From Stegostoma tigrinum (lineage: Eukaryota): a stretch of DNA of 64,000 nucleotides. A program made the translations under genes and the position numbers. The DNA lies in contig NC_081365.1 of the NCBI RefSeq assembly GCF_030684315.1, forward strand, positions 17,112,001 to 17,176,000, in the 5' to 3' direction. Below, in pieces: positions 1,582 to 56,500 of the stretch. Below the pieces are notes generated by a model. The model did not search any database, was not told the DNA's origin, and worked only from the letters and a program-made list of their open reading frames with translations. Numbering within the stretch: the stretch's first letter is position 1; every line of letters starts with the position of its first letter.

Positions 1582-1964
1582 CAGTGATAATGGGAACTGC
1601 AGATGCTGGAGAATCCAAGATAATAAAATGTGAGGCTGGATGAACACAGCAGGCCCAGCAGCATCTCAGGAGCACAAAAGCTGACGTTTCGGGCCTAGAC
1701 CCTTCATCAGAGAGGGGGATGGGGTGAGGGTTCCGTCTTCCCTGGACTGACCTATCCCCTCCCTACCTCCCCACCTATACTCTCCTCTCCACCTATCTTC
1801 TTTTCTCTCCATCTTCGGTCCACCTCCCCCTCTCTCCCTATTTATTCCAGAACCCTCACCCCATCCCCCTCTCTGATGAAGGGTCTAGGCCCGAAACGTC
1901 AGCTTTTGTGCTCCTGAGATGCTGCTGGGCCTGCTGTGTTCATCCAGCCTCACACTTTATTATC
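1582..1964. mobile_element. Penelope family A fold-back 3' fragment inserted in CR1
   Basis: 14-bp TSD cacaattctgttat (1568-1581, 1965-1978); inverted arms 1619-1733 / 1850-1964; same terminus as the GIY-YIG element at 30552-32826. Confidence 0.9.
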
Positions 1965-4825: not shown

Positions 4826-5158
4826 TTAGATTAGGTTAGATTCCCTACAGTGTGGAAACAGGCCCTTCGGCCTAACAAGTCCACGCCGCCCCTTGAAACA
4901 TCCCACCCAGACCCAGACCCAGACCCATCCCCCTATAACCCACACACCCCAGAACACTACAGATAATTTAACAAGGCCGATCCACCTAGCCTGCACATCT
5001 TTGGACTGTGGGAGGAAACCGGAGCACACAGAGGAAACCCATGCAGACACGGGGAGAATGTGCAAACTCCACACAGACAGTTGCCTGAGGCTGGAATCGA
5101 ACCCGGGTCCCTGGAGCTGTGAGGCTGCAGTGCTAACCACTGAGCCACTGTGCCACCC
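4826..5158 (-). mobile_element. HE1-like V-SINE
   Basis: tRNA-like head with A box (tggctcagtgg) and B box (ggttcgattcc), V-domain tgtgtggagtttgcacattctcccc, CR1-like 3' end. Confidence 0.88.
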
Positions 5159-6593: not shown

Positions 6594-9405
6594 GCTCTAC
6601 AGAAGTGCCCAGACTTTGAACATGGGCCTCAGAGCTGTAAGACCAGTGACAGCACCACTACTCTACCATTCACCCCCTGAAGTAATGGGTTGGAAGGAAG
6701 GAATTCAACACATGAAGCCTGACTGGCTGAAAACATTGTTAGTTTGCTGTGATGGAGAAGGAATGCCCACAGCTGGTGAGCATTGGAGAACTGGAAGAAG
6801 GAGGTAGGAATTTAAATGCCAGGGTGATCATTTTAGATTTGTGTCTTTTGGGGACCCAATAAGGACAATAAAGGAGAGCTGTCCCGAGTGACACTGAATT
6901 TAGTGCAGGATAGGAGATGAGCCGCAGAACTTTGAAGAAGTTGAAATTTATAGATGGTTAAAGATGAGACGCCAGCAGGAGATCACTGGAGTTGTGAATT
7001 CTGACAAAAACATGGATGACACAAAATGTCTTCAATGCTAAAATAATTTCAAGTAAAGGCTCAGGAGTATATCAGCCATCTGTTTTAAATGGTATTACAT
7101 TTAATAGGCAGCTCAGTGCAAACACAGGCTGTCCGAGTGGAAAATAACATATCAGCTTATTAAAGCAATTTTGATAACATACGACAAATTAGTTAATTAA
7201 TCAAACTCATGTTCAACCAAATAACATTAATGAACTAACAGACAACAGCATTTAGCAATGGTATAAAAATTGTTTATTAACCGTGCAATCATTCAGGAGA
7301 AAATATGGACGCAGCAGCAATAATAACAATGGCCATACGTAGCCAAACTATCAGAAGTACAGGCCATCAACAAGGCGTGAAATCTTTTAGCTCAGAACCC
7401 CTGGGATAAATGTTCATCACAGTCCATAGCGACAGGGTAATTTGATAGAGCTGACTGTCTGCTTTTAAGAACAGAGCAGATTGCCTCAGTGTCCTGAAAA
7501 TATTTACCTCTCAATCGACATTATTCATCATTTCAGATTGCTGGCCGTGGGGCAGCTTGAGTTGGCAAATTACCTGTTGTGTTTCCTACATTTCAACAGA
7601 GACTTGGCTTCAAAGGTACTCTGGGATGCCCTGGATTGTGAAGGTACTATATAAATGCAAGTTCCTTCTCTCTTTGTGAATGTGGGCTTAATAGAATGAG
7701 AGTCTTACAGAAAGGATAATGTTCTGTTCACCCAGGTTACAGCCCTGGGAGATGCTGAAGGCAGACAGTGTTACAGGGTTGGCTATCAGTTTAAATAATG
7801 ACCAATATGATTTTAGGACAGAGGTATGAAACTCAGCAGTAGGTCACGCAGAGCTGTGGTTGTTGACGATAGAGTGTAGGGGCTCATAAATTAGGAACAC
7901 AAACAAGATTGTGAACGTTTTCAGCCAAACAGAATAAGACGCCTTTAATTACTCAATGCTTCCCTGAAACTAGGGCCAGCTCACCCGTGACCTGGTATTA
8001 AATAAGCTCCATGGTAACAGAGAGGGGACAGCGGAATTAAAGGTGGGAGTGGAAGTGTGAAAACTGATGACAATCCCTTTTACTGGCACTGGCACATTGT
8101 GACTCAGGGGCAATTTAAATAAGTGATACTCCAAAGAGCACAAGGTAATAGGAAACAGCTTTTCCGTCATTTGGAAAAAATGCCCTGTGGGAGAAAATAG
8201 AAGTCTCCAACCCTGAGTTTAATTTCATTTGTATCAAATTGCCTCAGTCCACGCCGCTTTGATCAATCACGATCTGCGTGCAACTCAACCCCCCTTCCGA
8301 CAATCAATCTTTTTTTCCCATTAATGAATGAGTCTTGCTGTCAAAGACTCTGCCCATTCAAAATGCTTGCCAGTAGCCATGATTTCTAATGGAAGAAAGT
8401 AGTGTGCACAAAATGTAGGTAGAGCCATAAAGCAATCAAAGTCCTCGAAGGCACCGTCAATCTGGTCAAACTGCAGTCACATGTCTCGTTTTCTGTGGGT
8501 ATATAGCAACATTGGCCATGTATTGATTTACTGTTTGCTCCAGGCTTCCAAGATTACTGGCTGGAACCACTGGCATCTGTTCAAAGCAGAGAAAAGACAG
8601 GTAAATCCGAGTTAAGCTTCATACAGGCTGATTACATTCAAAGGCTAATTTTCACAAGACGTAAGAGAAGGTGTGGTGAAGGTTCACAGAATTTATTCCT
8701 GCAATGAAAGGGATGCCCTATCTTATGGACCACGTCCCCCTCAAACGTAACCTAGAACCTAACTTTTCCTATTTTAAGAATGAGTGTAATGTGCTATATT
8801 CCAGATGCAATTCAACTGGGCAAACTACTCAACATCGAGCAAAACACCATTTATTCAACACTACGGTTAAAATACAACAAAAGAAAGAAGAACATAAAAT
8901 AATAACTCTATTGGAAAACATACCGCTTAGATACGGTAACTATTACTAATTATGTGTTCCAATATAGTAACATCCCATAAACACCCACTTGGTCAGATTT
9001 TCTCACATGCCACACCCATGCTAGAAAGAGAAATTCAAGTTTTAAGAAGATTTGTAGCTCAGGTCGAGGTTCTGGATGTGAGTTTGCTCGCTGAGGTGGA
9101 AGGTTCGTTTTCAGACGTTTCGTCACCTTTTTTTTATTTGAAAAAATATACTTTATTCATAGAATGTACAAAAAATAAAACATTTATACACCTATCCAGT
9201 CATGCAAGCCACTCCGGGTTACCCGGGGGTACGTACACCAACTAATGGAAAAAAAAACAAAACAGAGAAAAAAAACAAAGCAAAGAAACCGCCCCGGCAG
9301 TCGTCACCCCGCACAGTCCCAGTTGGCCCCCTGACCAGTTGGGGAAGGTGCCAGCTGGGCCCAGTTACCAGATAGGATTCTTTTCCCTTTTCTGGACGAG
9401 GGGGC

Positions 9406-12400
9406 TCATACGGTGGTCTTTCCCCACCGCGCCTTGGCGGCGGCTGCCCCAAGCTTTAGCGCGTCCCTCAGCACGTAGCCCTGGACCTTGGAGTGCGCCA
9501 GTCTGCAACACTCGGTCGGGGTCAGTTCTTTCAGCTGGCAGACCAGCAAGTTGCGGGCAGACCAAAGAGCATCTTTCACCGCATTGATGGTCCTCCAGGC
9601 GCAGTTGATGTTGGTCTCTGTGTGCGTCCCCGGAAACAGCCTGTAGAGCACGGAGTCCCGCGTCACGGAGCTGCTCGGGACGAACCTCGACAAATACCAC
9701 TGCATCCCCCTCCAGACCTCCTGTGCATAGGCACACTCCAGAAGGAGGTGATCAACAGTCTCGTCCCCCCCGCAGCCACCTCGAGGGCAGCGTGCGGTGG
9801 TGCAGAGATTCCGGGCGTGCATAAAGGATCTCACTGGCAGAGCCCCTCTCACCGCCAGCCAAGCAATGTCCTTGTGCTTGTTTGAAAGTTCTGGCGATGA
9901 GACATTCTGCCAAACGACTTTGGCAGTCTGCGTGGGGAACCACACGATGGGATCCACCCTCTCCTTTTCCCGAAGGGTCCTGAGGATACTACATGCTGAC
10001 CACTGCCTGACGGCCTTGTGGTCAAAGGTGTTTCCTTTCAAAAATTTCTCCACGAAGGACAGGTGGTACGGAACGGTCCAACTACTCGGAGCGTTCCGCG
10101 GCAACGAGGCCAGGCCCATCCTTCGCAACACCGGGGACAGGTAGAACCTCAGTAAGTAGTGACACTTGGTGTTTGCATACTGAGGATCTATGCACAGCTT
10201 GATGCAGCCACACACAAAGGTAGCCGTCAGGGCGAGGGTGGCGTTCGGTACGCCCCTTCCCCCATTTCCCAGGTCTTTGTACATGGTGTCTCTGCGGACC
10301 CGGTCCATCCTCGACCCCCAAATGAAGTGGAAGATGGCCCGGGTGACCGCAGCAGCGCGGGTCCAGGTAATAGGCCAGGCCTGCGCCACATACAACAGCA
10401 CCGAAAGCCCCTCGCACCTGACAACCAGGTTCTTACCCGCGATGGAGAGGGACCGGAGCGTCCACCTGTCCAGCTTCTGCTTAAATTTGGCGATACATTC
10501 CTCCCAAGTCTTAGTGCATGCCCCAGCTCCACCAAACAAAACACCCAGCACCTTCAGGTAGTCTGTCCTGACGGTGAAGGGGATGAAGGAGCGGTCGTCC
10601 CAGTTTCCGAAGAACATGACCTCGCTCTTAACCCTATTGACTTTGGCACCCGAGGCCAGTTCAAACTGTTCCAACAGTCTACTCACCGACCGACGTTCGG
10701 TGCAGAAGACGGTGACATCGTCCATGTACAGGGAGGTCTTGACCTGAAGGCCTCCGCTGCCTGGGATAGTCACGCCCTTCAGGCTCACGTCCTTCCTGAT
10801 GGAGGCGGCGAAGGGCTCCACACAGCACACGAACAAGGCAGGAGAGAGCGGGCAGCCCTGCCTGGCTCCAGATCTAACAGGAAAACTGTCTGATTCCCAC
10901 CCGTTGATCAAGACTGCGTTAACGATGTTGGCGTAGAGCAGCCGGATCCAATTGCGGATGCCCTCCCCGAACCCCAATTTGGAGAGGACGTCCCTCATGT
11001 AAGCATGAAAGACCCTGTCGAAGGCCTTCTCCTGGTCCAGGCTGACGAGGCAGGTGTCAACCCGCCTGTCCTGTACGCAGGCGATCGTATCCCTGATGAG
11101 CGCGAGGCTCTCAGCGATCTTCCTGCCCGGCACAGCACAGGTTTGGTCAGGGTGAATCACTGACTCCAGGACAGACCTGACCCGGTTGGCAATGACCTTG
11201 GCCAGGATTTTGTAGTCCACATTCAAAAGTGAGATGGGACGCCAATTCTTAATTTCTTCCCTCTCCCCCTTCCTCTTGTAAATGAGGGTGATGATGCCCT
11301 TCCTCATGGACTTGCACATTTCCCCTGCCCGAAGTGCACTATTGTACACCTCCAGCAGGTCCTGGCCGACCAGGCCCCACAGAGCGGAATACAGCTCGAC
11401 CGGTAAGCCGTCGCTTCTGGGAGTCCTATTCCTCTGCAAGGACATGTGGGCTCTGGCCAGCTCGTCCAGGGATATCGGCCGGTCCAGCCACTCCCTCGTG
11501 CCGTCGTCTAAGACCTCCGTGATAGACGACAGGAACGACTCGGAGGCCGTGCTGTCCATGGGCTTCGTGTCGTACAGTCCGGCATAGAAGGATCTGCTGA
11601 TCCTCAAAACGTCGGGCCGAGACGACGTCACCGAGCCGTCGTCCTCCTTCAGCCGGCTAAGCACAGAACTCTCTTTGTGCACCTTCTAAAAGAAGAAACG
11701 CGAGCACGTCTCGTCCTGCTCCACGGAGCGGACCCTGGACCAGAAGATTATCCAGGAGGCCTCCGCGGCGAAGAGCGAGGCTTGCTGGCCCCTCACCTCG
11801 CGGAGGTCCTCCGTGACATCGACCCCCATCAACTGCAGAAGGAGCAGGTTCTGCACCCTTTTCTGGAGTCGCGACAGCTTTTCCCGCCTCTCTCTTGCCT
11901 TCTGAACACCCTTGAGGACAAAGAACCTCTTGATGTTCTCCTTCACCGTCTCCCACCAGTCGACTGGAGACTCAAAGAGGGGTTTCACGGTTCTCCAACC
12001 GGCGTACTCCCTCTTAAGCTCCTCGACGTTCTCTGGGGTCAACAGAGTCGTGTTGAGCTTCCACGTCCCCTTGCCGGCCGGCTGGTCGTCCTGTAAGTGA
12101 CAGTCGGCCAACAGGAGGCAGTGGTCAGAGAAGAACACCGGCTCGACACCGGTGGACCTGACCGAGAACGTCCGTGACACAAACAGGAAGTCTATCCTTG
12201 AGTGGATAGACCCATCTGGCCGCGACCAGGTGTACCTCCGCTGTGCTCTGTCTGCAGGGGTGCTGAAGACGTCGAGCAGCTTGGCATCCTTCACCGTACC
12301 CATCAGGAATCTGGACGTGACGTCCAGTTGAATCCCCCCACCCGCTGTCCCCACGCCGGATCTTCCATCTGCATCAATGATGCAGTTGAAGTCCCCGCCT

Positions 12401-12817
12401 AGGATGACCGGCCTGGACGTAGCCAGCAGGGGTGGAAGCCGCTGCAGGACGGCCAACCGCTCACTCCGTACCGCTGGGGCGTACACGTTGATCAGCCTCA
12501 GGGGAGCGTTCCTGTAGGTGATGTCTGCCACTTGGAGGCGCCCCCCCCACCACCTCCTGAACTTGAGAGATGGTGAAGTTGCACCCCCACAGCAGAATAG
12601 CCAGGCCCGAAGAGCGACAGTCGTTACCCCCCGACCAGATCGAAGGCCCACAGGTCCAGGCGCCGGACCATTTCCCGTACCTGCCGAGGTGCGGTATCCC
12701 GCACTCCTGCAGAAACAGGAGGTCCGCCTTGATGGTGGTCAGGTAGGCCAACGTGGACACACATCTCGCGGTTGACTTGACGCTGCGTACATTAATGCTC
12801 GCAATTCATGCCCCCAT
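9406..12817 (-). pseudogene. Tx1 ORF2 (APE endonuclease - RT - C-terminal Cys motif) with three evident lesions
   Basis: MGA*IASINVRS (TGA 12806-12808), FLQE, frameshift in the G-run 12541-12548, NVYAP, GGDFN, SRIDF, SDH, TAG at 11686-11688, NWRPISLLNVDYKI, DQEKAFD, RQGCPLSP, YMDD, CPRGGC..ETVDHLLLEC. Confidence 0.93.
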
Positions 12818-14237
12818 TGTGGGCAGTGACCGCAGTACCCTCCCCAAGTCCAAGGTCCAGCCCCTCCATCTGTCCCTTCATGCCCATTGCCCGGGCTAAC
12901 TGCTGGACGCGCTTCGGGCTCAGGAAACCATCCGTGCTGCCTTCCGGGTGGCATCCCCCCGTCAGGGGTGCGGAGGCAGGAGGATCCGGCTCCGGGTCAG
13001 GCTGGGGACGTGCTGTTTCCTCCTTCCCGCCTGGAAGTTCCGGGGGGCCCTCCAGTGCTCCAGCGGCACTTGACTGGGTGTCGGAGTGAGCCTCAGGACG
13101 CCTCCCGTCACCTGGAAGCGGGGTGCTGCTTTCCTTCCCCCTCGAGACCTTTAACTTCTGCTTCGGGTGGGCCCTCTCCAAATCCCCCTCGTCAGATGAG
13201 CTCTTATAGCCCCCCTGTAGCTGCCTCTTCCCGCCTGATTGTTGCGGTTCCTGGGCCCATCGACGCACCTTCCTCCTCGCTTTCCGGACTGTTGTCCACT
13301 CCCCTGGGTCGTCTGTCGCCGCCTCCATTGGCTCCGGGTTGTCGGGGGGGATCGGAGCCTGCAGGGGTGCTTTGCTGGCCTCGGGCCCATCCTGCATGGC
13401 CTGGCCCTCCTGCACATTAGTGGGGTCCTTGCTGGGCCCTGGTGCCTTCCTCTCCTCCGGGGGGGCTGGCCCCGCATTGCCCCTGCCGGCGACCTGGGCG
13501 TAGGTAGTACCCCGCCACGGGCATGCCCTATAGAAGTGGCCCGCTTCCCCGCAAAGGTTGCAGCTTCTCTCTCGTGGGCAATCCTTTGCAAGGTGTCCCT
13601 CCTCCCTGCAGTTCCTGCAGATGGTGGCTTTGCAGTCGGCCGCCATGTGACCTGACCTACCACAGGCATGGCAGACTTTAGGTTGCCCTGCATAGGTCAG
13701 GTAGCCCCTGCTCCTGCCGATCGCGAAGCTGGACGGTGGGTGTGCGACATTCCCGTCTGCGCCCATCCTCAGCATCACCTTGACCTGCCTCTTACTCGTC
13801 CAGATGCCAAAGGGGTCCACGATGTCAGTTAGGTCCCCTTCCACCTTCACATACCTTCCGAGGAAGGTCAGGACATCAACTCCTGGCACATGCGGGTTGT
13901 ACATGTGTACAGTCACCATACGGCTCCTCTGTGCTGGCATCACGAACAGCGGGACAGCGGTCAATACAGAGAGGGGGCCCTCACCTCCTTTCTCCTTGAA
14001 AACCTCCAGGAAGCGCTCGCAAAGCTTGGCACTCCGGAAGGTCACATTGTAAAAACCTCCTCCGGGGAAATCCTGCAGGCAGTAAATGTCCGCAGAAGCA
14101 AACCCACAACAGTCCAACAGGACCCTCTTCACGAAGAAGGTGCGGTCCACAGGTGCACCTTCATCCACCTTCTTTACAGAAACACGGATGGTGTTCCGGA
14201 CCCCCTGACCTGGGGCACGAGCACTTGCCGCAGCCAT
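12792..14237 (-). CDS. Tx1 ORF1, gag-like nucleic-acid-binding protein with three CCHC zinc knuckles (481 aa, intact)
   Basis: ATG at 14237 (MAAASARA); CHACGRSGHMAADC, CRNCREEGHLAKDC, CNLCGEAGHFYRAC; low-complexity C-terminus. Confidence 0.9.
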   Translation of the reverse strand: MAAASARAPGQGVRNTIRVSVKKVDEGAPVDRTFFVKRVLLDCCGFASADIYCLQDFPGGGFYNVTFRSAKLCERFLEVFKEKGGEGPLSVLTAVPLFVMPAQRSRMVTVHMYNPHVPGVDVLTFLGRYVKVEGDLTDIVDPFGIWTSKRQVKVMLRMGADGNVAHPPSSFAIGRSRGYLTYAGQPKVCHACGRSGHMAADCKATICRNCREEGHLAKDCPRERSCNLCGEAGHFYRACPWRGTTYAQVAGRGNAGPAPPEERKAPGPSKDPTNVQEGQAMQDGPEASKAPLQAPIPPDNPEPMEAATDDPGEWTTVRKARRKVRRWAQEPQQSGGKRQLQGGYKSSSDEGDLERAHPKQKLKVSRGKESSTPLPGDGRRPEAHSDTQSSAAGALEGPPELPGGKEETARPQPDPEPDPPASAPLTGGCHPEGSTDGFLSPKRVQQLARAMGMKGQMEGLDLGLGEGTAVTAHNGGMNCEH

Positions 14238-14434
14238 CGTTGCAGGTTGGCTGCTCCCCTGAACCAGCGTTAGGCCGAAGCCAGCATTAAGATCCACTGG
14301 TCGCAAGGGTGCACAGCCAACCCGACGTCCTCCTTTCACCTCCAAGACAGCACTCTCCTCCTCTCGGTCCACAAGAGAGTGGGTCTTTATTGTGTTCGAG
14401 ATGTAAGCTAGTTCACTGAGCTTGCCGGTTCGTT

Positions 14435-14476
14435 CCCAAACGTTTCGTCACCATTCTAGGTAACGTCATCAGTGAG
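14435..14476 (-). ncRNA. Minimal hammerhead ribozyme motif at the Penelope/Tx1 5' junction
   Basis: CUCA-CUGAUGA-C-GUUACC-uagaau-GGUGAC-GAAAC-GUU-UGGG; activity untested. Confidence 0.75.
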
Positions 14477-16705
14477 CCTCTGACGAAGCGCTGGTGTTAT
14501 GTCCCACTTTCTGTTTATCTGGTTAGGTTTCCTTGGGCTGGTGATGTCATTTCCTGCATTGGTGATGTCATTTCCAGTTCATTTTCTCAGGGGATGGTAG
14601 ATTGGCTCCAAATCAATGTGTTTGTTGATGGAGTTCCGGTTGGAATGCCATACTTCTAGGAATTCTCGTGCATGTCCCTGTTTGGCTTGTCCTAGGATGG
14701 ATGTGTTGTCCCAATCAAAGTGGTGTCCTTCCTCATCTGTATGTAAGGATACGAGTGATAGTGGGTCATGTTGTTTTGTGGCTAGTTGATGTTCATGTAT
14801 CCTGGTGGCTAGCTTTCTGCCTGTTTGTCCAATGTAGTGTTTGTCACAGTTCTTGCAAGGTATTTTGTAAATGATGTTCGTTTTGCTTGTTGTCTGTATA
14901 GGGTCTTTTAAGTTCATTAGCTGCTATTTTAGTGTGTTGGTGGGTTTGTGGGCTACCCTGATCCGAGGTCCGAGTAGTCTGGCAGTCATTTCGGAAATGT
15001 CTTTGATGTAGGGGAGAGTGGTTATGGTTTCTGAGCCCGTTTTGTCTGTTTGTTTGGGTTTATTGCTGAGGAATCGGCGGACTGTGTTCATTGGGTACCC
15101 ATTCTTTTTGGATACGCTGTATAGGTGATTTTCCTGTGCTCTGTGTAGTTCCTCTGTGCTGCAGTGTGTGGTGGCTCGTTGGAATAATGTTCTAATGCAG
15201 CTTCGTTTGTGGGTGTTGGGATGGTTGCTCCTGTAGTTCAGTATTTGGTCCGTATGTGTTGTTTTCCTGTAGACGCTGGTTTGAAGTTCCCCATTGGCTG
15301 TTCGCTCTAGTGATAGTGGGTCATGTCTAGCTCTACTAGAAACGTCTGAAAACGAACCTTCCACCTCAGCGAGCAAACTCACATCCAGAAATTCAAGCTT
15401 CTAGCTGTGACAGAGAGAGGGGAAAAATAGCTTTTACTTCTTCAAAACTCCATCAGCTTCTACTGAACCTAAAAGCTAAAAACAAACTAGACACCCTGGT
15501 CTGTCACAGGCCAACCATCCAGGAAGCTGCTTTGTTCCAACTTTTTAAAAAATCCCAAGGTTTCACAGCCTGTTTATGTTACCACAGACAGCTCGTTACC
15601 TCTCTTTCAATCTTGCTCTTCAAAGAAACCAGGACAAAATACACCTCTTAAAGCCATGGCATCATCACACCAGTGAGGATAAATTGAGTAGAATAGACTC
15701 ATATTTTCAGCGTATTAGAGGGATGAGAGGCCATTCCATTGAAACATGTACAATTCCTAGAGAGCTTAACAGATATGGAGAGGTTGTTCCCCATTGCTCA
15801 AGAGTCTAGATGTAAAGGTCAGGATAAGGGATACCCATGTAGCACTGAGATAATGACACATTTCTTCACTCAGTGGGTTGTGAATCTTCAGAATTCTTTG
15901 CCCCAGAAATCTGTGGATGTCCAATAGCTGAATATATTTAAGATTGGGATAAAAGCTATTTTCAGCAACCAAGGTATAGAGAGAGTAGCTTACCAATGTA
16001 ACAGTTCAACTCTGATCTTGCTGAATGCTAGCGCAGACTCAAGGAGTCAAGTTTCCTGCTCTCTCTCTGACTTCTGATGATCTGCGCTGGGAACCCTCAC
16101 CTGAAGTTGCAATTGACAGGGATATTCATGGCCAGCTTGACTAAGAGATTCTCAATTTGATGGAAGCATTTGATGCTCCTTGTCAACACCACTCACTTGG
16201 AAAAGAAGCCCTTAAACAATCTGAATTTTAGATGTTTTATTTATTAACAGGGCTTTGACATCACTAGAATGGATATAATTTATTGCTGATAGTTACACTG
16301 GGAAAATTGGGGTGAATCTTCAATACCTCTGTAATTACATGCAACCCACATTTTATGTCCCCCAGGTGCCTGTGTAGCCCCTCTCCCAGCAACCTTCACT
16401 CGGTTGCAGAGCTTTCAATTCTCGTGGTCCCACCTTCTAGAATATTCTCTTTCCGTCTCTTCACGTTGCCAAATTTTACTCATTAAACCAGCACATTTCA
16501 TGTTCCATTTCACACTTCTCTACCATTCAATCCATTTCTTTTCAATGAAATGCCATGGAATATTTCATTACAGCGGACAGGAGATTGTGATAATGGTGAA
16601 AATAATTATGATGATAAAATGAGCTTCATGCAGACCACAGTGATATAATTGATCTCATGACTCTGACATTAGTAAGAGAGGTGTCCAGTCTAGAATGCGC
16701 ATTTC

Positions 16706-16997
16706 ATAGAATCATAGAAACCCTGTGGAAAGAGGCCCCTCGGCCCAACAAGTCCACGCCGACCCTAAGAGCATCCCACCAAGACCCACCACCCTATAAC
16801 CCACTTAATCTACACACCCCTGAGCACTACCGGTAACTTAGCATGGCCAATCCACCTAGCCTGCACATCTTTGGACTGCAGGAGGAAACCGGAGCACCCA
16901 CACAGACACGGGGAGAACTTGCAAACTCCACACAGACAGTTGCCTGAGGATGGAATCGAACCCAGGCCCCTGGCGCTGTGAGGCAGCATGCTAACCG
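16706..16997 (-). mobile_element. HE1-like V-SINE
   Basis: Homologous to 4826-5158. Confidence 0.85.
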
Positions 16998-19532: not shown

Positions 19533-20280
19533 ACATAGAAACATAGAAAATAAGAGCAGGAGGAGGCCATTCAGCCCTTCGTGCCTGCATTGCCATTCAT
19601 CACTATCATGGCTGACCATCCAACCTAATCGACTGATCCTGCTTCCTCCCCATAACTTTTGATCCCATTCGCTCCAAGTGCTATATCAAGTCGTCTCTTG
19701 AATACATTCAATGTTTTGGCAACAACTACTTCCTGTGGTAATGAATTCCACAGGCTCACCACACTTTGGGTGAAGAAATGTCTTCTCATCTCCATCCTAA
19801 GTAGCCTACCCAAAATCCTCAGACTGTAACCCCTGGTTTTGGGCACATCCACCATTGGGAATATCATCCCTGTAACTATGCTGTCTAGTCCTGTTAGAAA
19901 TTTATAAGACTCTATGAGATCCCCCTTCATTTGTCTGAACTCCAGCAAAAACAATCCCAACCTAGTCAATCTCTCCTCATATATCAATCCCACCAGCCCC
20001 GAAATCAGCCTGGTAAACCTCCGCAGCACTCCCTCAAGAGCAACAGTATCCTTCCTCAGAAAAGACCAAAACTGCACACAATATTCTCGGTGCGGCCTCA
20101 TCAATGCCCTGTATGACTGCAACGACACATGCCTGCTCCTATACTCGAAACCTCTCACAATGAAGGCCAACATACCATTTGCCTTCATTACCGCCTGCTG
20201 CACCTGCATGCTTACCTTCATGGACTGGTACACAAGGACTCCCAGGTTCCATTGCACACTCCCCTCTCCCAATTTACAGT
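19533..20280 (-). mobile_element. CR1 3' fragment
   Basis: ORF2 C-terminus (RPHREYCVQFWS..FFTQSVVSLWNSLPQ) and tail. Confidence 0.88.
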
Positions 20281-21525
20281 CCAGTACAAGGTATGGTGGA
20301 AGCAGTCCAGGACAGAGCATGGTGGAAGCTGTCCAGTACAGAGCATGGTGGAAGCAGTCCAGTACTGAGCATGGTGAAAGGAGTCCAGAACAGAGCATGG
20401 TGAAAGGAGTCCAGCACAGAGCATGGTGAAAGCAGTCAAATACAGAGCATGGTGAAAGCAGTCCAGAACAGAGCATAGTGAAAGCAGTCCAGAACAGAGC
20501 ACGGTGGAAGCAGTTCAGTACTGAGCATGGTGAAAGGAGTCCAGAACAGAGCATGGTGAAAGGAGTCCAGCACAGAGCATGGTGAAAGCAGTCCAGTGCA
20601 GAGCATGGTGGAAGCAGTCCAGTACAGAGTATGGTGGAAGCAGTCCAGTACAGAGCATGGTGGAAGCTGTCCAGTACAGAGCATGGTGGAAGCAGTCCAT
20701 TACAGAGCATGGTGGAAGCAGTCCAGTACTGAGCATGGTGAAAGGAGTCCAGAACAGAGCATGGTGAAAGCAGTCCAGTGCAGAGCATGGTGGAAGCAGT
20801 CCAGTACAGAGCATGTGGAAGCAGTCCAGTACAGAGTATGGTGAAAGCAGTCCAGTACAGAGCATGGTGGAAGCAGTCCAGTACAGAGCATGGTGGAAGC
20901 AGTCCAGTACAGAGCACGGTGAAAGCAGTCCAGTACAGAGCATGTCAAGCAGCATCTCAGGAGCACAAAAGCTGACGTTTCGGGCCTAGACCCTTCATCA
21001 CAGAGACTCTCTCTGATGAAGGGTCAAGGCCCGTAATGTCAGCTATTGTTCTCCTGAGATGCTGCTTGGCCTGCTGTGTTCATCCAGCTTCACACTTTGT
21101 TATCTTGGATTCTCCAGCATCTGCAGTTCCCATTATCTCCAGTACAGTGCATGGTGGAAGCAGTCCAGTACAGAGTATGGTGGAAGCAGTCCAGTACAGA
21201 GCATGGTGGATGCAGTCCAGGACAGAGCCTGGTGGAAGCAGTCCAGAACAGAGCATGGTGGATGCAGTCCAGAACAGAGCATGATGGAAGCAGTCCAGTG
21301 CAGAGCATGGTGAAAGCAGTCCAGTGCAGAGCATGGTGAAAGCTGTCCAGTACAGAGCATGGTGAAAGCAGTCCAATATCTAGTATGTTAGAAGCAGTCC
21401 TGTACAGAACATGGTGGAAGCAGTCCAGTACAGAGTATGGTGGATGCAGTCCAGTACAGAGCATGATGGAAGCAGTCCAGTGCAGAGCATGGTGGAAGCA
21501 GTCCAGTGCAGAGCATGGTGGAAGC
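20281..21525. repeat. 26-bp minisatellite (CCAGTACAGAGCATGGTGGAAGCAGT)n, about 40 units, interrupted at 20945-21138
   Basis: Direct 26-nt periodicity with variant units (GGAAGC/GAAAGC/GAAAGG). Confidence 0.97.
20945..21138. mobile_element. Penelope-A hairpin fragment inside the minisatellite
   Basis: Inverted arms around 21005; same terminus ...cagttcccattatct. Confidence 0.88.
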
Positions 21526-22101
21526 CAGTGGTTAGTACACAACTAGGCCCCCGGTGCGAGTCTGCTGTGGAGAACCCTTAGAGAGAGACTGTGATGTTTG
21601 TCTTTTTAACTTGCTTCTTGTTTTTCTAACCTATGGTTATACTATGTGTAACCGTAATGTAACTTCTGTTCTTGCTACTGCTATTTTGTAACTAAGATGG
21701 TGCCCTGTTTTGATGATGTTTTTACTGTAACTAATCTTGTAACTGAAGAAGTTGTACTTTTGTACCTAAGATGTAAGTGGCAATTTATAAACTTTTTATT
21801 GAGCCAATTCAATTCAATGTAATCTTGGCTGGTAAAAAGAAGTTAACAGATGTGCTAGTCTAATTGACCTTGTCTTTCTTTCCTGCTACCATCATGTATC
21901 TGTGCACATGCGATCTAATGCCCCTCTGCTCCTCTAAATCTCTTGAGATCTTACTCCTTGTAGGGTTTCAGTTAGCTGTACCCTACCCCTACGCCTCAAA
22001 AGGCGAATGGTTTGGCCTTGGCCAAAGTTAGTAAAAGATAATTACTTAAAGTTCATGATCTTGGATACAGTTACCCATTTGCATTGCATGATGTGATATA
22101 A

Positions 22102-22242
22102 NNNNNNNNNNNNNNNNNNNNNNNNNNNNNNNNNNNNNNNNNNNNNNNNNNNNNNNNNNNNNNNNNNNNNNNNNNNNNNNNNNNNNNNNNNNNNNNNNNN
22201 NNNNNNNNNNNNNNNNNNNNNNNNNNNNNNNNNNNNNNNNNN
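22102..22242. other. Assembly gap (141 N)
   Basis: Run of n. Confidence 1.
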
Positions 22243-22884: not shown

Positions 22885-23555
22885 GAGATAATGGGAACTG
22901 CAGATGCTGGAGAATTCCAAGATAATACAATGTGAGGCTGGATGAACACAGCAGGCCAAGCAGCATCTCAGGAGCACAAAAGCTGACGTTTCGGGCCTAG
23001 ACCCTTCATCAGAGAGGGGGATGGGGAGAGGGAGCTGGAATAAATAGGGAGAGAGGGGGAGGCGGACCGAAGATGGAGAGTAAAGAAGATAGGTGGAGAG
23101 AGTACAGGTGGGGAGGTAGGGAGGGGGTAGGTCAGTCCAGGGAAGACGGACAGGTCAAGGAGGTGGGATGAGGTTAGTAGGTAGCTGGGGGTGCGGCTTG
23201 GTGTGGGAGGAAGGGATGGGTGAGAGGAAGAACTGGTTCTTCCTCTCACCCATCCCTTCCTCCCACACCAAGCCGCACCCCCAGCTACCTACTAACCTCA
23301 TCCCACCTCCTTGACCTGTCCGTCTTCCCTGGACTGACCTACCCCCTCCCTACCTCCCCACCTGTACTCTCTCCACCTATCTTCTTTACTCTCCATCTTC
23401 GGTCCGCCTCCCCCTCTCTCCCTATTTATTCCAGCTCCCTCTCCCCATCCCCCTCTCTGATGAAGGGTCTAGGCCCGAAACGTCAGCTTTTGTGCTCCTG
23501 AGATGCTGCTTGGCCTGCTGTGTTCATCCAGCCTCACATTTTATTATCTTGGAAT
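22885..23555. mobile_element. Penelope-A near-perfect palindrome (320-bp arms, 2-nt loop)
   Basis: Arms 22914-23233 / 23236-23555; HHR motifs at 22985-23012 (-) and 23457-23484 (+). Confidence 0.92.
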
Positions 23556-26095: not shown

Positions 26096-26436
26096 CATAG
26101 ACTCCCTACAGGGTGGAAACAGCCATTCAGCCCAACAAGTCCACACCAACTCTTGAAAGAGTATCCCACCCAGATTCACCGCACACCCCCCCCCCCTCCA
26201 CTATCCCTGTAACCATGCATTTCCCATGGATAATTGTCTCCATATCTCCAGACACTGTGTGTAATTTAGCACAGGCAGTCTACCTAACCTGCACATCTTT
26301 GGATTGTGGGAGAAAATGCACACAGACATGTGAGGGATTGTACAAACTCCACACAGATAGCCACCAGACACTAGAATTGAACCCAGGTCCCTGGGGCTGT
26401 GAGGCAGCAGTGCTATCCGCTGAGCTATCATACCAC
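26096..26436 (-). mobile_element. HE1-like V-SINE, diverged
   Basis: Homologous to 4826-5158. Confidence 0.78.
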
Positions 26437-30551: not shown

Positions 30552-32826
30552 AGAGATAATGGGAACTGCAGATGCTGGAGAATCCAAGATAATAAAGTGT
30601 GAAGCTGGATGAACACAGCAGGCCAAGCAGCATCTCAGGAGCACAAAAGCTGACGTTTCGGTCCTAGACCCTTCATCAGAGAGGGGGATGGGGTGAATGT
30701 TCTGGAATAAATAGGGAGAGAGGGGGAGGCGGACCGAAGATGGAGAGAAAAGAAGATAGGTGGAGAGGAGAGTATAGGTGGGGAGGTAGGGAGGGGATAG
30801 GTCAGTCCAGGGAAGACGGACAGGTCAAGGAGGTGGGATGAGGTTGGTAGGTAGGAGATGGAGGTGCGCTTGGGTTGGGAGGAAGGGATGGATGAGAGGA
30901 AGAACAGGTTAGGGAAGCAGAGACAGGCTGGGCTGGTTTTGGGATGCAGTGGGGGGAGGGGATGAGATGGGCTGGTTGTGTGATGCAGTGGGGGGAGGGG
31001 ACGAACTGGGCTGGTTTTGGGATGCGGTGGAGGAAGGGGAGATTTTGAAACTGGTGAAGTCCACATTGATACCATTGGGCTGCAGGGTTCCCAAGTGGAA
31101 TATGAGTTGCTGTTCCTGCAACCTTCGGGTGGCATCGTTGTGGCACTACAGGAGGCCCATGATGGGCATGTTGTCTAAAGAATGGGAGGGGGAGTTGAAA
31201 TGGTTCACGACTGGGAGGTGCAGATGTTTATTGCGAACCGAGTGGAGGTGTTCTGCAAAGCGGTCCCCAAGCCTGCGCTTGGTTTCCCCAATGTAGATGA
31301 AGCCACGCTGAGTACAATGGATACAGTATACCACATTGGCAGATGTGCAGGTGAACCTCTGCTTAATATGGAAAGTCATCTTGGGGCCTGGGATAGGGAT
31401 GAGGGAGGAGGTGTGGGGGCAAGTGTAGCACTTCCTGCTGTTGCAGGGGAAAGTGCCGGGTGTGGTGGGGTTGGAGGGCAGTGTGGAGCGAACATGGGAG
31501 TCACGGAGAGAGTGGTCTCTCCGGAAAGCAGACAAGGGTGGGGATGGAAAAATGTCTTGGGTGGTGGGGTCGGATTGTAAATGGCAGAAGTGTCGGAGGA
31601 TGATGCGTTGTATCCGAAGGTATCCGGAGCTCGAACAGTTCATTCACTTCAACAACACCTTCCACCCCAATCTCAAGTTCACCTGGGCCATCGCCAACAC
31701 TCCCCTCACCTTCCTGGACCTCTCAGTCTCCATCTCAGGCAACCAGCTTGTAACTGATGTCCATTTCAAGCCCACCGACTCCCACAGCTACCTAGAATAC
31801 ACCTCCTCCCACCCACCCTCCGGCAAAAATTCCATCCCCTATTCCCAATTCCTCCGCCTCCGCCGCGTCTGCTCCCACGATGTGGCATTCCACTCCCGCA
31901 CATCCCAGATGTCCAAGTTCTTCAAGGACCGCAACTTTCCCCCCATAGTGGTCGAGAATGCCCTTGACCACGTCTCCCGCATTTCCTACAAAACATCCCT
32001 TCCCCTGCAACCACAGGAAATGCTACACTTGCCCCCACACCTCCTCCCGCACCCCCATCCCAGGCTCCAAGATGACTTTCCATATTAAGCAGAGGTTCAC
32101 CTGCACATCTGCCAATGTGGTATACTGCATCCACTGTACCCGGTGTGGCTTCCTCTACATTGGGGAAACCAAGTGGAGGCTTGGGGACCGCTTTGCAGAA
32201 CACCCCCGCTCGGTTTGCAATAAACATCTGCACCTCCCAGTCGCAAACCATTTCCACTCCCCCTCCCATTCTTTAGACAACATGTCCATCATGGGCCTCC
32301 TGCAGTGCCACAATGATGCCACCAGAAGGTTGCAGGAACAGCAACTCATATTCCGCTTGGGAACCCTGCAGCCCAATGGTATCAATGTGGACTTCAGCAG
32401 CTTCAAAATCTCCCCTTCCCCCACCGCGTCCCAAAACCAGCCCAGTTCGTCCCCCCCTCCCCCCACTGTATCCCAAAACCAGCCCAGCCTGTCTCTGCCT
32501 CCCTAACCTGTTCTTCCTCTCATCCATCCCTTCCTCCCAACCCAAGCCGCACCTCCATCTCCTACCTACTAACCTCATCCCACCTCCTTGACCTGTCCGT
32601 CTTCCCTGGACTGACCTATCCCCTCCCTACCTCCCCACCTATACTCTCCTCTCCACCTATCTTCTTTTCTCTCCATCTTCGGTCCGCCTCCCCCTCTCTC
32701 CCTATTTATTCCAGAACATTCACCCCATCCCCCTCTCTGATGAAGGGTTTAGGCCCGAAACATCAGCTTTTGTGCTCCTGAGATGCTGCTTGGCCTGCTG
32801 TGTTCATCCAGCTTCATACTTTGTTA
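30552..32826. mobile_element. Penelope-like element family A, two inverted 3' copies (minus 30552-about 31620, plus about 31621-32826)
   Basis: 16-bp TSD tcaccctttgtttatg (30536-30551, 32827-32842); RT C-terminus FHPNLKFT..FLDL..FKPTDSHSYL; GIY-YIG NVVYCIHCTRCGFLYIGETK..RFAEH in both arms; HHR motifs at 30652-30679 (-) and 32737-32764 (+). Confidence 0.93.
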
Positions 32827-33159
32827 TCACCCTTTGTTTATGCCTGCAGCGTCCTTGACACTGATCTAGCTCACTCCAAACCAGGTCTCAGAGTGAACAG
32901 AACCTCGAACACACCTGTTTATACCTGTCAGCCAGGGATGGAGTAACAACTTCAAACATGGGATGCATATCTAGCAAGATAGAGGCAGGGTAATTTGCTC
33001 CATTTGGAGCTCCAATCTTCTCATCTGTTCCCATTCCTTTAACTTTCTGAAATATTCTTTGTCTCCCTCCTCTGCAATAATTCTAACACCCTGTCCTTAT
33101 CTCACCACCATCCCCATCCCCACCCTCCACCACCCACCCACCGCCCCTGCGCAGTGATA

Positions 33160-53500: not shown

Positions 53501-56500
53501 ATCCTAGGACAAGCCAAATAGAGACACGCACGAGAATTCTTGGAAGCATGGCATTCCAACCGGAACTCCATCAACAAACACATTGATTTGGAGCCCATCT
53601 ACCACCCTCTGAGAAAAAGAACAGGAAATGACATCACTGATGCAGGAAATGACATCACCAACCCAAGGAAACCTAAACACATAAATAGAAAGCGGGACAT
53701 AACACCAGCACTTCATCGGAGGCTCACTGATGATGTTACCTTGAATGGTGATGAAACGTCTGAAAACTAACCTTCCAGCTCAGCAAGCAAACTCACATCT
53801 AGAACCTCAACCTGAGCTACAAATCTTCTCAAAACCCGCTATTACATTTATGACATTAGTCTCTCAGAACAATGTTGTGCAATATCTTTGTGGCATTGGG
53901 GCAGCCATAATTTAAAGAGATTTGCAAGAACGTCACAAGCATCAATGTATGAGCCATGACTCCATTCGTAATACTTTCATCTCTGAGTTCAAAAGTATGT
54001 AGGTTCAAGCAAAAACCATACTGGTACTTCAGTACAGTTTTGCAGGACTGCTGACCTGTCACAGATGCTGTCCAAATGCTTTCTCAGATGGATATTGAAG
54101 ATCCCACACAATGTACTCCAATCCTCAACCAACAGCGCAAACACAAATCAACTAGTCATGATCATATTACTGTTCAAAAGACAATAGGTGCAGGAGTAGG
54201 CCATTCAGCCCTTCGAGCCAGCACCACCATTCATTATGATCATGGCTGATCATCCACAATCAGTATCCTGTTCCTGCCTTATCCCCATAACCCTTGATTC
54301 CACTATCTTTAAGAGCTCTATCCATCATGCAGCTGTGTACGAATTAGTTGCCATATTTTCTACATTGCAACAGTGACTACACTTCACAAAAGTGTTCAGC
54401 TGTGAGGTGATTTCAGATGTCTTGTGGTTGTGAAGGCTGCTTTTGCACAGTAAAAAGGAGCAGGAGCAGGCCATTTGGCCCTTCAAACTTGCTCCACCAT
54501 TCAAAATGATCATGGCTGATCATCCAACTCAGTTCCTGTATTTTGCCCCTTTCATCATTTTAGCTCTAAAAATATTCAATATTTTGGCCTCAACTCGTTT
54601 CCATGGCAGAGAATTCACTCAACCCACCTTTCTGTGAGTGAAGAAATTCCAATTTATCTCTAGCCTGAATTGCCTACCTGTATGTGCAAACTGTGATTCT
54701 TGGTTCCAGACTCCCTGGTTGTTGGAAACATGCTTCCTGCATTTATCTTCTTTTGCCCTGTCAGAATCTTATCAGTGTTAATGACATCCACATCCCCCCC
54801 ACCTCCGATACTACTAAATCCTTGTGAATATAGTCCTAAACAATCCACTCTCTCTTTATATGTCAGCCCTGCTATCCCAGCGATCTGTCACAGTACCCCA
54901 GGAATGGTCTTACTAAGGCCCTACACAATGGCAGCAAGATATCCCTGCCCCTGAATTCGAAAACCTGCCTAGTGACTCCTGGTGAGAAAATCCACATATA
55001 TACTCGGCTTAATTCAAATTGTGACAGATCAGTAACTCACTGTAAAAGTATAAAGTGTTATATTTACCTGGTTTCACGGTGATGTAAAGTGAAGCATTCT
55101 TAGGCTGAGGAAGTGCTTTTATTGCAGCCAGACATGTAACTTCAGCCTCTGCACTAAGGGTGAGATTTAAAGTGCTGACGACTGTATAGAGATGTCCTGA
55201 AGGTGGAGACTTGATGGTGGTGTATCTCTCTGAATGTACAGTTGTTTGGTTTATTGTCCAGGTGATAGTTGGCTCAGGATTCCATCCTTCTGCCTTACAG
55301 ATGACGTCTGTGCTGCGGTTTGTCACCACAGATGAAATCTTGCTCTCAAAAAATAACGTTCCTTCAACTGTGGCATGATAACAGAGGAGGTTTAGTTTCA
55401 TACAGCGTTTAACCAAACATAAATTTTTCTAAACGATCTAGAATTTATATTCCCAAATTAGCTTAAGTGCTTTACTTATCTTTCACTATAACTCCTTTGC
55501 TATTGAAACTTTTTCCATTCCTTCCTTACACATAGAGTAGTGTATTTTCCATTCCTTCTTCATGGGATATGGCTATCACACATAAAGCCAGTATTTATTA
55601 ACCATTCATAACTAAATGGTGGCAGGTTTTGAATTTAAAACACTGATGATCTTTGGATACAACTGACATCTAAATGTTATCGTTTTGATGTTAGTTAAGT
55701 GCTAACCACATGGATGTCAGACTCAAGTCACATAAAGGCCCAGGCAGGATGTCATTCCCTAAAGGCCTTTACTGATCCAGTTACGTTGTTGGAACAATTC
55801 AACAGCTTTGTGGTCACTTTCTTCGATATCAGAATTTTGCCTCCTGACTTTCTGTCAAGTTATTAACCTGCCATGGTGACTTGTGGGATCATATTGTCTG
55901 CATAGCTATTGGACGTTTAGTCCATTAGCATAATCCCTACAAGATTTTACTTTGAACTAACATGCCGACAGCGCGCTGCTCAAACTGCTCTGAAAACAGG
56001 TCTTCCCAAATTGGTGTGACAAACAAACACACAACAAGAAACAAGAGTAGGCCACTCAGAACTCAAATAAAGTCATGAGCTGATCTAATTTTAAGCTTAA
56101 CTTTACATTCCTATATATCCCTAATAATCTTTCACCCCTTGATAATCAAACATCTGCCTCATTGGTGTCATTAAACACAGAAGATCAAGGCTGTGGCCCT
56201 ATTAAAGTGCGATTGGATTAAGACTTCTTGAAGCAAAGTGTCTGTCCTAATTTAGGTCTGCTGCTGATTTATTCTGTTCTGTAAAACGGCATCGCTGCAG
56301 TGCAGTGAGGTAATAGGGTCAATGGAGATTTGCTGTTGACAGAAAATGTCAATACAGCTCACAGGACAATAGGTTACTCTTTTAAAACAGCAGTATTTAA
56401 AAAATGTCAAGTTAGGATACCAAATAAACATCTTCTCAGATGAATGAAACAAAGTAAAAATACCTCTAATTGATATCTCTTTATATCTTTAATCAAATCT

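What the first reader, a model, noticed from the sequence alone, without database searches (positions are those of the whole stretch)
9115..14452. Tx1 retrotransposon inserted inside the catalytic core of a Penelope hammerhead ribozyme: candidate new target-specific family
Seen: the 13-bp TSD (sense GGTGACGAAACGT) is the 3' strand of stem II plus GAAAC-GU of the Penelope-B hammerhead motif. The uninterrupted site is at 53724-53763. The Tx1 is co-oriented with the Penelope, and its 5' junction falls one nucleotide before the predicted cleavage bond. Established: Tx1-clade elements are often sequence-specific (Keno in U2 snRNA, Dewa in tRNA arrays, Xenopus Tx1L in a DNA transposon), and PLEs carry minimal hammerheads. 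Inference: this family targets the most constrained motif of another retroelement as a multicopy safe haven. I know of no described Tx1 family that targets a PLE ribozyme, but I could not search, and only one copy is visible here.
Basis: partly seen in the sequence, partly recalled or inferred. Interest (0 to 1): 0.92.

Follow-up and report, generated by a model that had tools for sequence, protein, structure and literature searches.

The report
LINE that targets a Penelope ribozyme
A dead 5.3-kb L1/Tx1-type jumping gene sits exactly at the self-cleavage site of the small hammerhead ribozyme of another jumping gene (a Penelope-like element). It begins with a copy of the sequence that normally follows that site, and it belongs to a very abundant family that probably aims at this site and may borrow the host element's ribozyme.

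Summary
A minus-strand L1/Tx1-like LINE (9128-14439) has an A8 tail and a perfect 13-bp target-site duplication, GGTGACGAAACGT. It interrupts a Penelope-like element (PLE) inside its minimal, dimer-type hammerhead, one base before the predicted cleavage bond.

New here: the first ~48 nt of the LINE match the PLE sequence just after the cleavage site in 32 of 48 positions, ungapped. The best unrelated placement in the window scores 27/48. The 5' junction therefore keeps every conserved sequence element of the hammerhead instead of destroying it.

Contigs of public runs show that the family is very abundant in this species and present in a second species. They also show many empty PLE sites. One 5'-truncated copy joins the same PLE site two bases further on, so it is an independent insertion. 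No cluster of non-PLE flanks appeared at the LINE ends.

First readers of this scan noted the same arrangement on at least six other pieces of this genome; I could not check those notes.

Best reading:
- A PLE-hammerhead-specific LINE family: about 0.7.
- Its RNA is co-transcribed with the PLE and cut by the PLE ribozyme: about 0.35, inferred only.

I found no published description.

The parts
9039..9114 (-). PLE 3' tail downstream of the hammerhead cleavage site, now separated from the rest of the PLE by the LINE
   Evidence: BLAST against the sister PLE copy: 53744-53835 matches 9130-9039 at 91%. Contigs with unlike flanks start at 9038, which marks the PLE terminus.
9115..9127 (-). 3' copy of the 13-bp target-site duplication (sense GGTGACGAAACGT). 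Together with C at 9114 it forms a GAAACGUC half-site right after the poly(A).
9128..9135 (-). Poly(A) tail of the LINE (A8), preceded by AATAAA
9136..9405 (-). LINE 3' UTR
   Evidence: The stretch lies between the ORF2 stop and the poly(A).
9406..11685 (-). ORF2 C-terminal piece: reverse transcriptase and zf-RVT. There is a short deletion near 10668 relative to most other copies.
   Evidence: Pfam RVT_1 at 2.6e-35 and zf-RVT at 7.9e-11. Human L1 ORF2p in the PDB at 4.9e-57. Loose ends at 10668.
11686..11688 (-). In-frame stop codon that splits ORF2
11689..12817 (-). ORF2 N-terminal part with the APE-type endonuclease. It is broken by a stop at codon 4 (12806-12808) and by a frameshift in a G8 run at about 12541.
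   Evidence: Pfam Exo_endo_phos at 1.1e-09 covers only the C-terminal half of the profile. Frames were read.
12792..14237 (-). ORF1 (from the ATG at about 14237): two ZCCHC3-type RNA-binding domains and CCHC zinc knuckles
   Evidence: Pfam PF23057, PF23058 and PF00098. Translation.
14238..14391 (-). LINE-specific part of the 5' UTR
   Evidence: No similarity to the PLE beyond about 48 nt.
14392..14439 (-). 5' leader of the LINE. It is a diverged copy (32/48, ungapped, in register) of the PLE sequence that follows the hammerhead cleavage site. It supplies U17 and a helix-I 3' strand (UGGG).
   Evidence: (repeat I3 runs to 14394). Next best non-PLE placement is 27/48; binomial P is 1.5e-9.
14440..14452 (-). 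5' copy of the 13-bp target-site duplication
14453..14480 (-). Upstream half of the PLE min-HHR: helix-I 5' strand (CUCA), CUGAUGA box, bulged C, helix-II 5' strand and loop
   Evidence: Motif features as published in PMC4209133.
14481..15312 (-). 5'-truncated body of the host PLE, with the GIY-YIG endonuclease end of its ORF
   Evidence: 92% identical to 52885-53805. GIY-YIG-type ORF at 14579-14917.
53724..53766 (+). Unoccupied sister site: a PLE min-HHR with two CpG-to-TpG changes (GGTGATGAAACGT)

Best explanation
This is a dead copy of a very abundant L1-superfamily, Tx1-like LINE family. The family integrates by target-primed reverse transcription at one defined place in Penelope-like elements: the 3' half of their minimal hammerhead ribozyme.

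The junctions give the nick positions. The bottom strand is nicked at 5'-GTCACC^ATTC-3'. The top strand is cut 13 bp away, at or next to the position that corresponds to the RNA cleavage bond. This produces the TSD GGTGACGAAACGT.

The element's RNA starts with a ~48-nt leader derived from the PLE sequence just after the cleavage site. Each full-length insertion therefore leaves a complete ribozyme at its 5' junction: the PLE core plus the LINE's cleavage-site and helix-I strand.

Inferred mechanism: the LINE has no need of its own promoter. It is transcribed with the PLE terminal repeat; in this PLE the ORF start codon lies inside the ribozyme. The PLE hammerhead then cuts the LINE RNA free at its 5' end. 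The half-site recreated after the poly(A) may also define a 3' end that can anneal to the next nicked target.

Shown: the anatomy, the homology of the leader, the abundance, the empty sites and one independent truncated insertion at the same site.

Inferred: strict site specificity (about 0.7), 5' processing by the ribozyme (about 0.35) and 3' processing with primer annealing (about 0.15).
For: - A perfect 13-bp TSD flanks a complete LINE with a poly(A) tail.
- The min-HHR features match PMC4209133.
- The leader matches the PLE post-cleavage sequence at 32/48, in register. All other non-PLE placements in the window score 27/48 or less. The perfect TSD next to a leader only 67% identical shows that the leader came with the RNA, not from the target.
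- Read laying laid 81,851 and 48,334 contigs from two samples of the species, 928 from a second species and 68 from a third.
- Empty-site contigs appear as loose ends at 9127 and 14440 and as joints 9130>14460, 9127>14466 and 9127>14484.
- One joint, 9870>14440, has 'AG' between its two sides. These are the next two PLE bases, so this is a 5'-truncated copy in the same site with a junction shifted by 2 nt.
- Heterogeneous flanks are listed at the PLE terminus (9038; 117 contigs, agreement 0.43), but no such cluster is listed at the LINE termini.
- The share of contigs that run on into unlike sequence is about 0.
- Targeting of other transposons by Tx1-clade elements is established (PMC4494074).
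- In the anole PLE PAc the ORF also starts inside the HHR, and that HHR cleaves in vitro (PMC11167929).
- Unchecked first-reader notes report the same arrangement on at least six other pieces of this genome.
Against: - Only one copy is in the window, and no other LINE fragment is present.
- Read laying shows only its best-supported rows (2735 loose ends and 475 joints are hidden). Absence of heterogeneous flanks is therefore weak evidence.
- The truncated-copy joint is a single contig of unknown side length.
- PLE min-HHRs cleave poorly in vitro and need a dimer (PMC4209133). For PAc no RNA-seq reads start or end at the HHR site, and cleavage was not needed for insertion in vitro (PMC11167929).
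- The junction has U17 instead of C17 and forms an 8-nt palindrome, AAACGUUU, which could trap it in an inactive pairing.
- MFE and cofold predictions recover only helix II.
- No run on record as RNA holds the stretch.
- The sister site at 53747 is unoccupied.
Confidence: 0.7

Rival explanations
1. Composite amplification. One LINE once landed in a master PLE, and the PLE-LINE-PLE composite was then multiplied by the PLE machinery or by segmental duplication. The recurrent association would then reflect hitch-hiking, not targeting.
For: - PLEs are very abundant here and form inverted or tandem structures.
- An unchecked first-reader note (s1-881644) describes a palindromic PLE with a whole LINE in both arms.
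- LINE and PLE contig depths are of the same order.
Against: - A 5'-truncated LINE joined to the upstream PLE part at the same site, with a junction shifted by 2 nt, is what LINE-driven insertion predicts.
- PLE-driven copying starts from the PLE tail. It would instead leave LINE 3' parts truncated against random genomic DNA.
- The model does not explain the PLE-like leader.
- A palindrome with both arms occupied is also expected if every arm offers a target.
Confidence: 0.1
2. Chance insertion of a non-specific LINE into an abundant repeat. The position in the hammerhead would be coincidental.
For: - The PLE tail is among the most abundant sequences in the runs, so random hits in PLEs are expected.
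- Only one copy is visible in the window.
Against: - The junction coincides within 1 nt with the cleavage bond.
- The LINE begins with 48 nt homologous to the sequence after exactly that bond (P about 1e-9).
- A second, truncated copy is in the same site.
- The bottom-strand nick site GTCACC^ATTC is unlike the TTTT^AA preference of L1 endonuclease (established knowledge).
Confidence: 0.07
3. One-off template switch. During this single insertion the reverse transcriptase jumped from the LINE RNA 5' end onto a hammerhead-cleaved RNA of a diverged PLE subfamily. That jump added the 48-nt 'leader', and its homology then guided the 5' join into a PLE.
For: - 5' template switching onto other RNAs is known for LINE reverse transcriptases (for example U6/L1 chimeras; established knowledge).
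- The leader starts exactly where a cleaved PLE RNA would start.
Against: - The first nick, which gives the 3' junction, already lies in the PLE ribozyme before any switch could act.
- Unchecked notes on other pieces report the same leader in other full-length copies (s1-881515, s1-881537, s1-881674).
- No loose-end cluster is listed at the boundary between leader and 5' UTR, near 14392.
Confidence: 0.05

Closest known systems
Target-specific Tx1-clade LINEs: Tx1L in the piggyBac element Tx1D, Tx1-Mar in Mariner-N4_AMi, Tx1-8_Crp and Tx1-4_AMi in LTR retrotransposons, Keno in U2 snRNA genes, Kibi and Koshi in microsatellites (PMC4494074)
   Same: These are L1-like two-ORF elements with an APE endonuclease. 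They insert precisely at one sequence of a multicopy target, which can be another transposon, and they leave a TSD. Dependence on transcription from the target has been proposed for them.
   Different: The target here is a Penelope-like element, at the cleavage site of its hammerhead. No such target appears in the literature I could search. The element also carries a leader copied from the target's downstream sequence.
R2 and other LINEs processed from co-transcripts by HDV-like ribozymes (R2 in 28S rDNA; also RTE and L1Tc; recalled from established literature, R2 co-transcription is cited in PMC4494074)
   Same: A site-specific LINE without its own promoter is transcribed with its target, and a self-cleaving ribozyme at the 5' junction releases it. 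Some R2 RNAs keep target sequence at the 5' end.
   Different: In R2 the LINE itself encodes the ribozyme, and it is HDV-like. Here the catalytic core would be the host transposon's hammerhead, and the LINE supplies only the substrate and helix-I strand. Cleavage is not shown here.
Minimal hammerhead ribozymes of Penelope-like elements (Cervera and de la Pena 2014, PMC4209133; PAc HHR, PMC11167929)
   Same: The interrupted motif has all published min-HHR features. It lies in the PLE terminal repeat, with the PLE start codon inside it, as in PAc.
   Different: The published work describes the ribozyme as part of PLE biology only. No other element has been reported to insert into it or to use it.
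SINEU and other retroposons whose 5' heads derive from the target or from co-transcribed RNA genes (PMC4494074)
   Same: Sequence from the target locus has become the 5' end of a Tx1-mobilised element.
   Different: There the head is an snRNA. Here it is the post-cleavage segment of a transposon ribozyme, on an autonomous LINE.

Membership tests
L1-superfamily / Tx1-clade non-LTR retrotransposon | ORF2 with an N-terminal APE-type endonuclease, a reverse transcriptase and a C-terminal zinc-binding domain; poly(A) tail; TSD | tested here: met
   Pfam Exo_endo_phos, RVT_1 and zf-RVT. Human L1 ORF2p in the PDB at 4.9e-57. A8 tail and 13-bp TSD.
L1-superfamily / Tx1-clade non-LTR retrotransposon | The reverse transcriptase groups with Tx1 rather than L1 in a phylogeny (RTclass1-type test) | not tested
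   No labelled reference set was available. The best hits are unnamed shark, amphibian and fish proteins (78-36% identity). They include BAD04856.1 (fugu) and BAC82621.1 (zebrafish). I recall these only from memory as coming from a screen for sequence-specific LINEs, and I did not verify that.
L1-superfamily / Tx1-clade non-LTR retrotransposon | ORF1 with RNA-binding domains and CCHC knuckles | tested here: met
   PF23057, PF23058, PF00098 and PF13696.
Target-specific LINE family (criterion of PMC4494074: one kind of sequence in more than 20% of flanks) | The same target sequence flanks independent copies | tested here: inconclusive
   One independent truncated copy lies at the same site, and no cluster of unlike flanks is listed. 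Unchecked notes on at least six other pieces agree.
PLE minimal hammerhead ribozyme (min-HHR) | CUGAUGA and GAAA boxes, an unpaired base between 9 and 10.1, a G10.1-C11.1 pair, long helix II, short helix I, palindromic 15.2-16.2 with no helix III, H at position 17 | tested here: met
   Read directly from the sequence against PMC4209133. Helix II is recovered by folding. Rfam models do not detect it.
PLE minimal hammerhead ribozyme (min-HHR) | Lies in the terminal repeat of an element that encodes a reverse transcriptase and a GIY-YIG endonuclease | tested here: met
   GIY-YIG-type ORF at 14579-14917 (Pfam E 0.001, below the cutoff) and RVT_1 in the sister copy. The motif lies about 100 nt after that ORF and about 75 nt before the PLE end.
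PLE minimal hammerhead ribozyme (min-HHR) | Self-cleavage activity | not testable with these tools
   This needs in vitro transcription and cleavage assays. Published min-HHRs cleave weakly and as dimers (PMC4209133).
Ribozyme-processed LINE co-transcript (R2-like strategy) | The LINE RNA 5' end is made by self-cleavage at the junction between target and LINE | not testable with these tools
   The sequence elements of an intact HHR are present at the junction. No run on record as RNA holds the stretch.

The most novel reading that the evidence does not exclude
A LINE family lives only in the hammerhead of Penelope-like elements and uses that foreign ribozyme to make both ends of its own RNA. 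At the 5' junction the PLE core cuts at the LINE's leader. The half-site recreated by the TSD just after the poly(A) is cut in the dimeric ribozyme geometry. This leaves a 3' end, GGUGACGAAACGUC, that base-pairs with the nicked bottom strand of the next PLE target and primes reverse transcription. One RNA-level site would then dictate the promoter, the processing, the target choice and the TSD length.
Probability: 0.15. Interest if true: 0.9.

Novelty: new variant of a known kind. Interest (0 to 1): 0.72.

Why it matters
Site-specific LINEs are models for how retrotransposons pick harmless targets, and they are being explored as tools for programmable insertion. A family aimed at a ribozyme of another retroelement would be a new kind of target.

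If the junction ribozyme is used, it would be the first case I know of in which a LINE borrows the catalytic RNA of its host transposon instead of encoding its own, as R2 does. It would also give the poorly understood PLE min-HHRs a testable in vivo readout. And it would show a three-level parasitism (genome, PLE, LINE) that shapes a large share of shark repeat content.

Tried and rejected
- Rfam found no hammerhead family, either at gathering threshold on the whole window or at E up to 10 on the two sites. The min-HHR lacks helix III, so I did not take this as evidence against it.
- MFE folding and cofolding of the junction RNAs recover only helix II. They are uninformative for such short helices.
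- BLAST of the LINE against the window finds no second copy.
- An exact-pattern scan for the LINE 3' UTR end in metagenome and viral contigs was blank.
Related LINE copies in Heterodontus, Chiloscyllium, Hemiscyllium and Cetorhinus could therefore not be fetched to see their flanks.
- Naming the fugu and zebrafish relatives through cluster members and papers gave no element names.
- Six literature searches found no paper that links Tx1 or LINE insertion to PLE hammerheads. Repbase Reports and subscription journals are not covered.
- I rejected a long, diverged TSD of about 60 bp. A perfect 13 bp next to 67% identity cannot come from a single duplication.

Full report
**What is there**

On the + strand, ACGTTTCGTCACC occurs at 9115-9127 and again at 14440-14452 without a mismatch. 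A one-mismatch search finds only one more site, at 53747-53759, where about 0.07 matches are expected by chance.

Between the two copies lies a complete minus-strand LINE, 9128-14439:
- an A8 tail preceded by AATAAA;
- a 270-nt 3' UTR;
- ORF2 with an APE endonuclease, a reverse transcriptase and zf-RVT;
- ORF1 with two ZCCHC3-type RNA-binding domains and CCHC knuckles;
- a ~200-nt 5' UTR.

The reverse transcriptase matches human L1 ORF2p in the PDB at 4.9e-57. It matches shark, amphibian and fish proteins much better, at 78% to 36% identity. The element therefore belongs to the L1 superfamily. The 'Tx1' label is plausible, but I did not test it by phylogeny.

This copy is dead. It has a stop at ORF2 codon 4 (12806-12808), a frameshift in a G8 run near 12541 and an in-frame stop at 11686-11688. 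It also has a short deletion near 10668 relative to most other copies.

**The host**

The flanks belong to a co-oriented, 5'-truncated Penelope-like element. A GIY-YIG-type ORF lies at 14579-14917 on the minus strand. The flanks are 91-92% identical to a sister copy at 52885-53835 (+), which also carries a reverse transcriptase piece.

In sense, the interrupted motif reads CUCA CUGAUGA C GUUACC UAGAAU GGUGAC GAAA CGU C. It shows every feature that Cervera and de la Pena list for PLE minimal hammerheads (PMC4209133):
- both catalytic boxes;
- an unpaired base between A9 and G10.1;
- the G10.1-C11.1 pair;
- a long helix II and a 3-4 bp helix I;
- a palindromic ACGU in place of helix III, which is the dimer-type design.

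A second, unrelated PLE family in the window has the same design with a different helix II. Rfam's hammerhead models do not see either motif, as expected for motifs without helix III.

The TSD is the 3' strand of helix II plus GAAACGU. The LINE's first base lies one position before the C17 cleavage bond.

The first 48 nt of the LINE (14439 down to 14392) are identical to the PLE sequence that follows the cleavage site at 32 of 48 positions, ungapped and in exact register. After that, identity falls to chance, 8 of the next 32.

Among all roughly 128,000 placements of that PLE 48-mer in the window, true PLE copies score 44-48, the leader scores 32 and everything else scores 27 or less. The binomial P is 1.5e-9.

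The 13-bp TSD is perfect while the adjoining leader is only 67% identical. The leader therefore cannot be part of the duplication. It arrived with the LINE RNA.

As a result the 5' junction reads ...CUCA-CUGAUGA-C-helix II-GAAA-CGU-U|UGGG.... This is a complete hammerhead with an allowed U17. Its helix I (CUCA/UGGG, 4 bp) is slightly better than that of the native PLE (UCA/UGA). A first-reader note on this window (s1-881485) says the same, and I confirm it.

**Is it a family, and does it target this site?**

The window holds only this copy. Contigs of four public runs laid on 8950-14650 show the following:
- 81,851 and 48,334 contigs from two samples of the species, 928 from a second species and 68 from a third.
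- Many empty PLE sites. These appear as loose ends at 9127 and 14440 whose consensus is the uninterrupted PLE, and as joints 9130>14460, 9127>14466 and 9127>14484.
- One joint from LINE position 9870 directly to 14440 with 'AG' between. These are the next two PLE bases. This is a 5'-truncated copy in the same site whose 5' junction lies 2 nt further on, so it is a separate insertion event.
- A cluster of unlike flanks at the PLE terminus (9038; 117 contigs, agreement 0.43), but none among the listed rows at either LINE terminus. The share of contigs that run on into unlike sequence is about 0.

Limits: only the best-supported rows are printed, the contigs are short and repeat-collapsed, and the truncated-copy joint is a single contig.

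First readers of this scan noted the same arrangement on at least six other pieces of this genome: s1-881488, s1-881515, s1-881637, s1-881644, s1-881711 and s1-881825. Some notes also report the same leader (s1-881537, s1-881674). I could not read those pieces, so these notes are leads, not support.

I put site specificity at about 0.7.

**How it most likely works**

The junctions give the nick positions directly. The bottom strand is nicked at 5'-GTCACC^ATTC-3', which is unlike the TTTT^AA preference of L1 endonuclease (established knowledge). The top strand is cut 13 bp downstream.

The following is inferred. In this PLE the ORF start codon lies in loop II/helix II of the ribozyme (ATG at 53745). 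The same is true of the anole element PAc, whose HHR does cleave in vitro (PMC11167929). The target therefore sits directly behind whatever drives PLE transcription. Every 5'-truncated PLE copy still carries this terminal repeat.

A LINE inserted there can be transcribed with the PLE, and the rebuilt hammerhead can cut it free. This is the R2 strategy, except that the catalytic core belongs to the host transposon.

In the dimeric geometry of min-HHRs, the core of one motif cuts the site of its partner. The half-site GGUGACGAAACGUC that the TSD places right after the poly(A) (note s1-881603) could then be cut by the 5'-junction core. That would leave an RNA 3' end complementary to the nicked bottom strand of a new target. 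This last step is speculative (about 0.15).

Points against ribozyme use:
- min-HHRs cleave weakly in vitro (PMC4209133).
- For PAc no RNA-seq reads end at the HHR site, and cleavage was dispensable for insertion in vitro (PMC11167929).
- The junction forms an 8-nt palindrome, AAACGUUU, that might trap it in an inactive pairing.
- Folding recovers only helix II.
- No run on record as RNA holds the stretch.

**Rivals**

- Composite amplification of a PLE that carries the LINE (0.1). It is suggested by note s1-881644. The truncated copy abutting the upstream PLE part argues against it, and it does not explain the leader.
- Chance insertion (0.07). The leader and the second copy argue against it.
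- A one-off template switch onto a cleaved PLE RNA (0.05). The first nick already lies in the ribozyme, which argues against it.

**Comparison and novelty**

Tx1-clade LINEs are known to target snRNA genes, 5S rDNA, microsatellites, satellites, DNA transposons and some LTR retrotransposons (PMC4494074). That paper does not mention Penelope. Six full-text searches found no paper that links LINE insertion to PLE hammerheads. Repbase Reports and subscription journals were not searchable.

I rate this as a new variant of a known kind: a target-specific LINE with a new target, a target-derived leader and a rebuilt ribozyme.

**Not done**

Noticed in passing
1683-1710(-), 1873-1900(+), 22985-23012(-), 23457-23484(+), 30652-30679(-), 32737-32764(+), 46727-46754(-), 47420-47447(+): A second PLE-type repeat family has a different minimal hammerhead, CTGATGAAGGGTCTAGGCCCGAAACGTC (4-bp helix II, tetraloop). 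Its copies lie in tight inverted pairs, for example 22907-23233/23236-23562, which are 99% complementary with 2 nt between them. None is interrupted by the LINE, although they share CGAAACGT with the target.
   Followed up: partly
15339-15393 (+): A short inverted copy of the PLE post-cleavage tail starts inside GAAACGUC. It abuts the 5' truncation point of the minus-strand PLE and is 46/48 identical to 9067-9114. This looks like the head-to-head fragment made in a single PLE insertion event.
   Followed up: partly
51513-52146 (-) and 52000-53835 (+): A head-to-head inverted pair of the same PLE family. The minus-strand arm ends just before its CTGATGA box, so it offers no target.
   Followed up: partly
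53745-53915 (+): The PLE ORF appears to start at an ATG inside the hammerhead (loop II/helix II), 16 nt before the cleavage bond. This resembles the anole PLE PAc (PMC11167929). In the LINE-occupied copy the same reading frame runs into the leader and stops after 13 codons.
   Followed up: partly
14436-14443 (-): U17 at the junction turns the 4-nt palindrome ACGU of the PLE into the 8-nt palindrome AAACGUUU. This could strengthen pairing in trans, or it could sequester core bases A13 and A14.
   Followed up: no
20176-20917 and 21034-21619; 33153-33341: Tandem arrays with a 26-nt unit (two blocks) and with a 28-nt G-rich unit.
   Followed up: no
5037-5129, 16896-16988, 26317-26409, 50241-50333: A dispersed repeat contains a tRNA-like GGAATCGAACCC segment. 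It is probably a SINE family.
   Followed up: no
22102-22242: A run of 141 N (gap or masked). I left it as it is.
   Followed up: no
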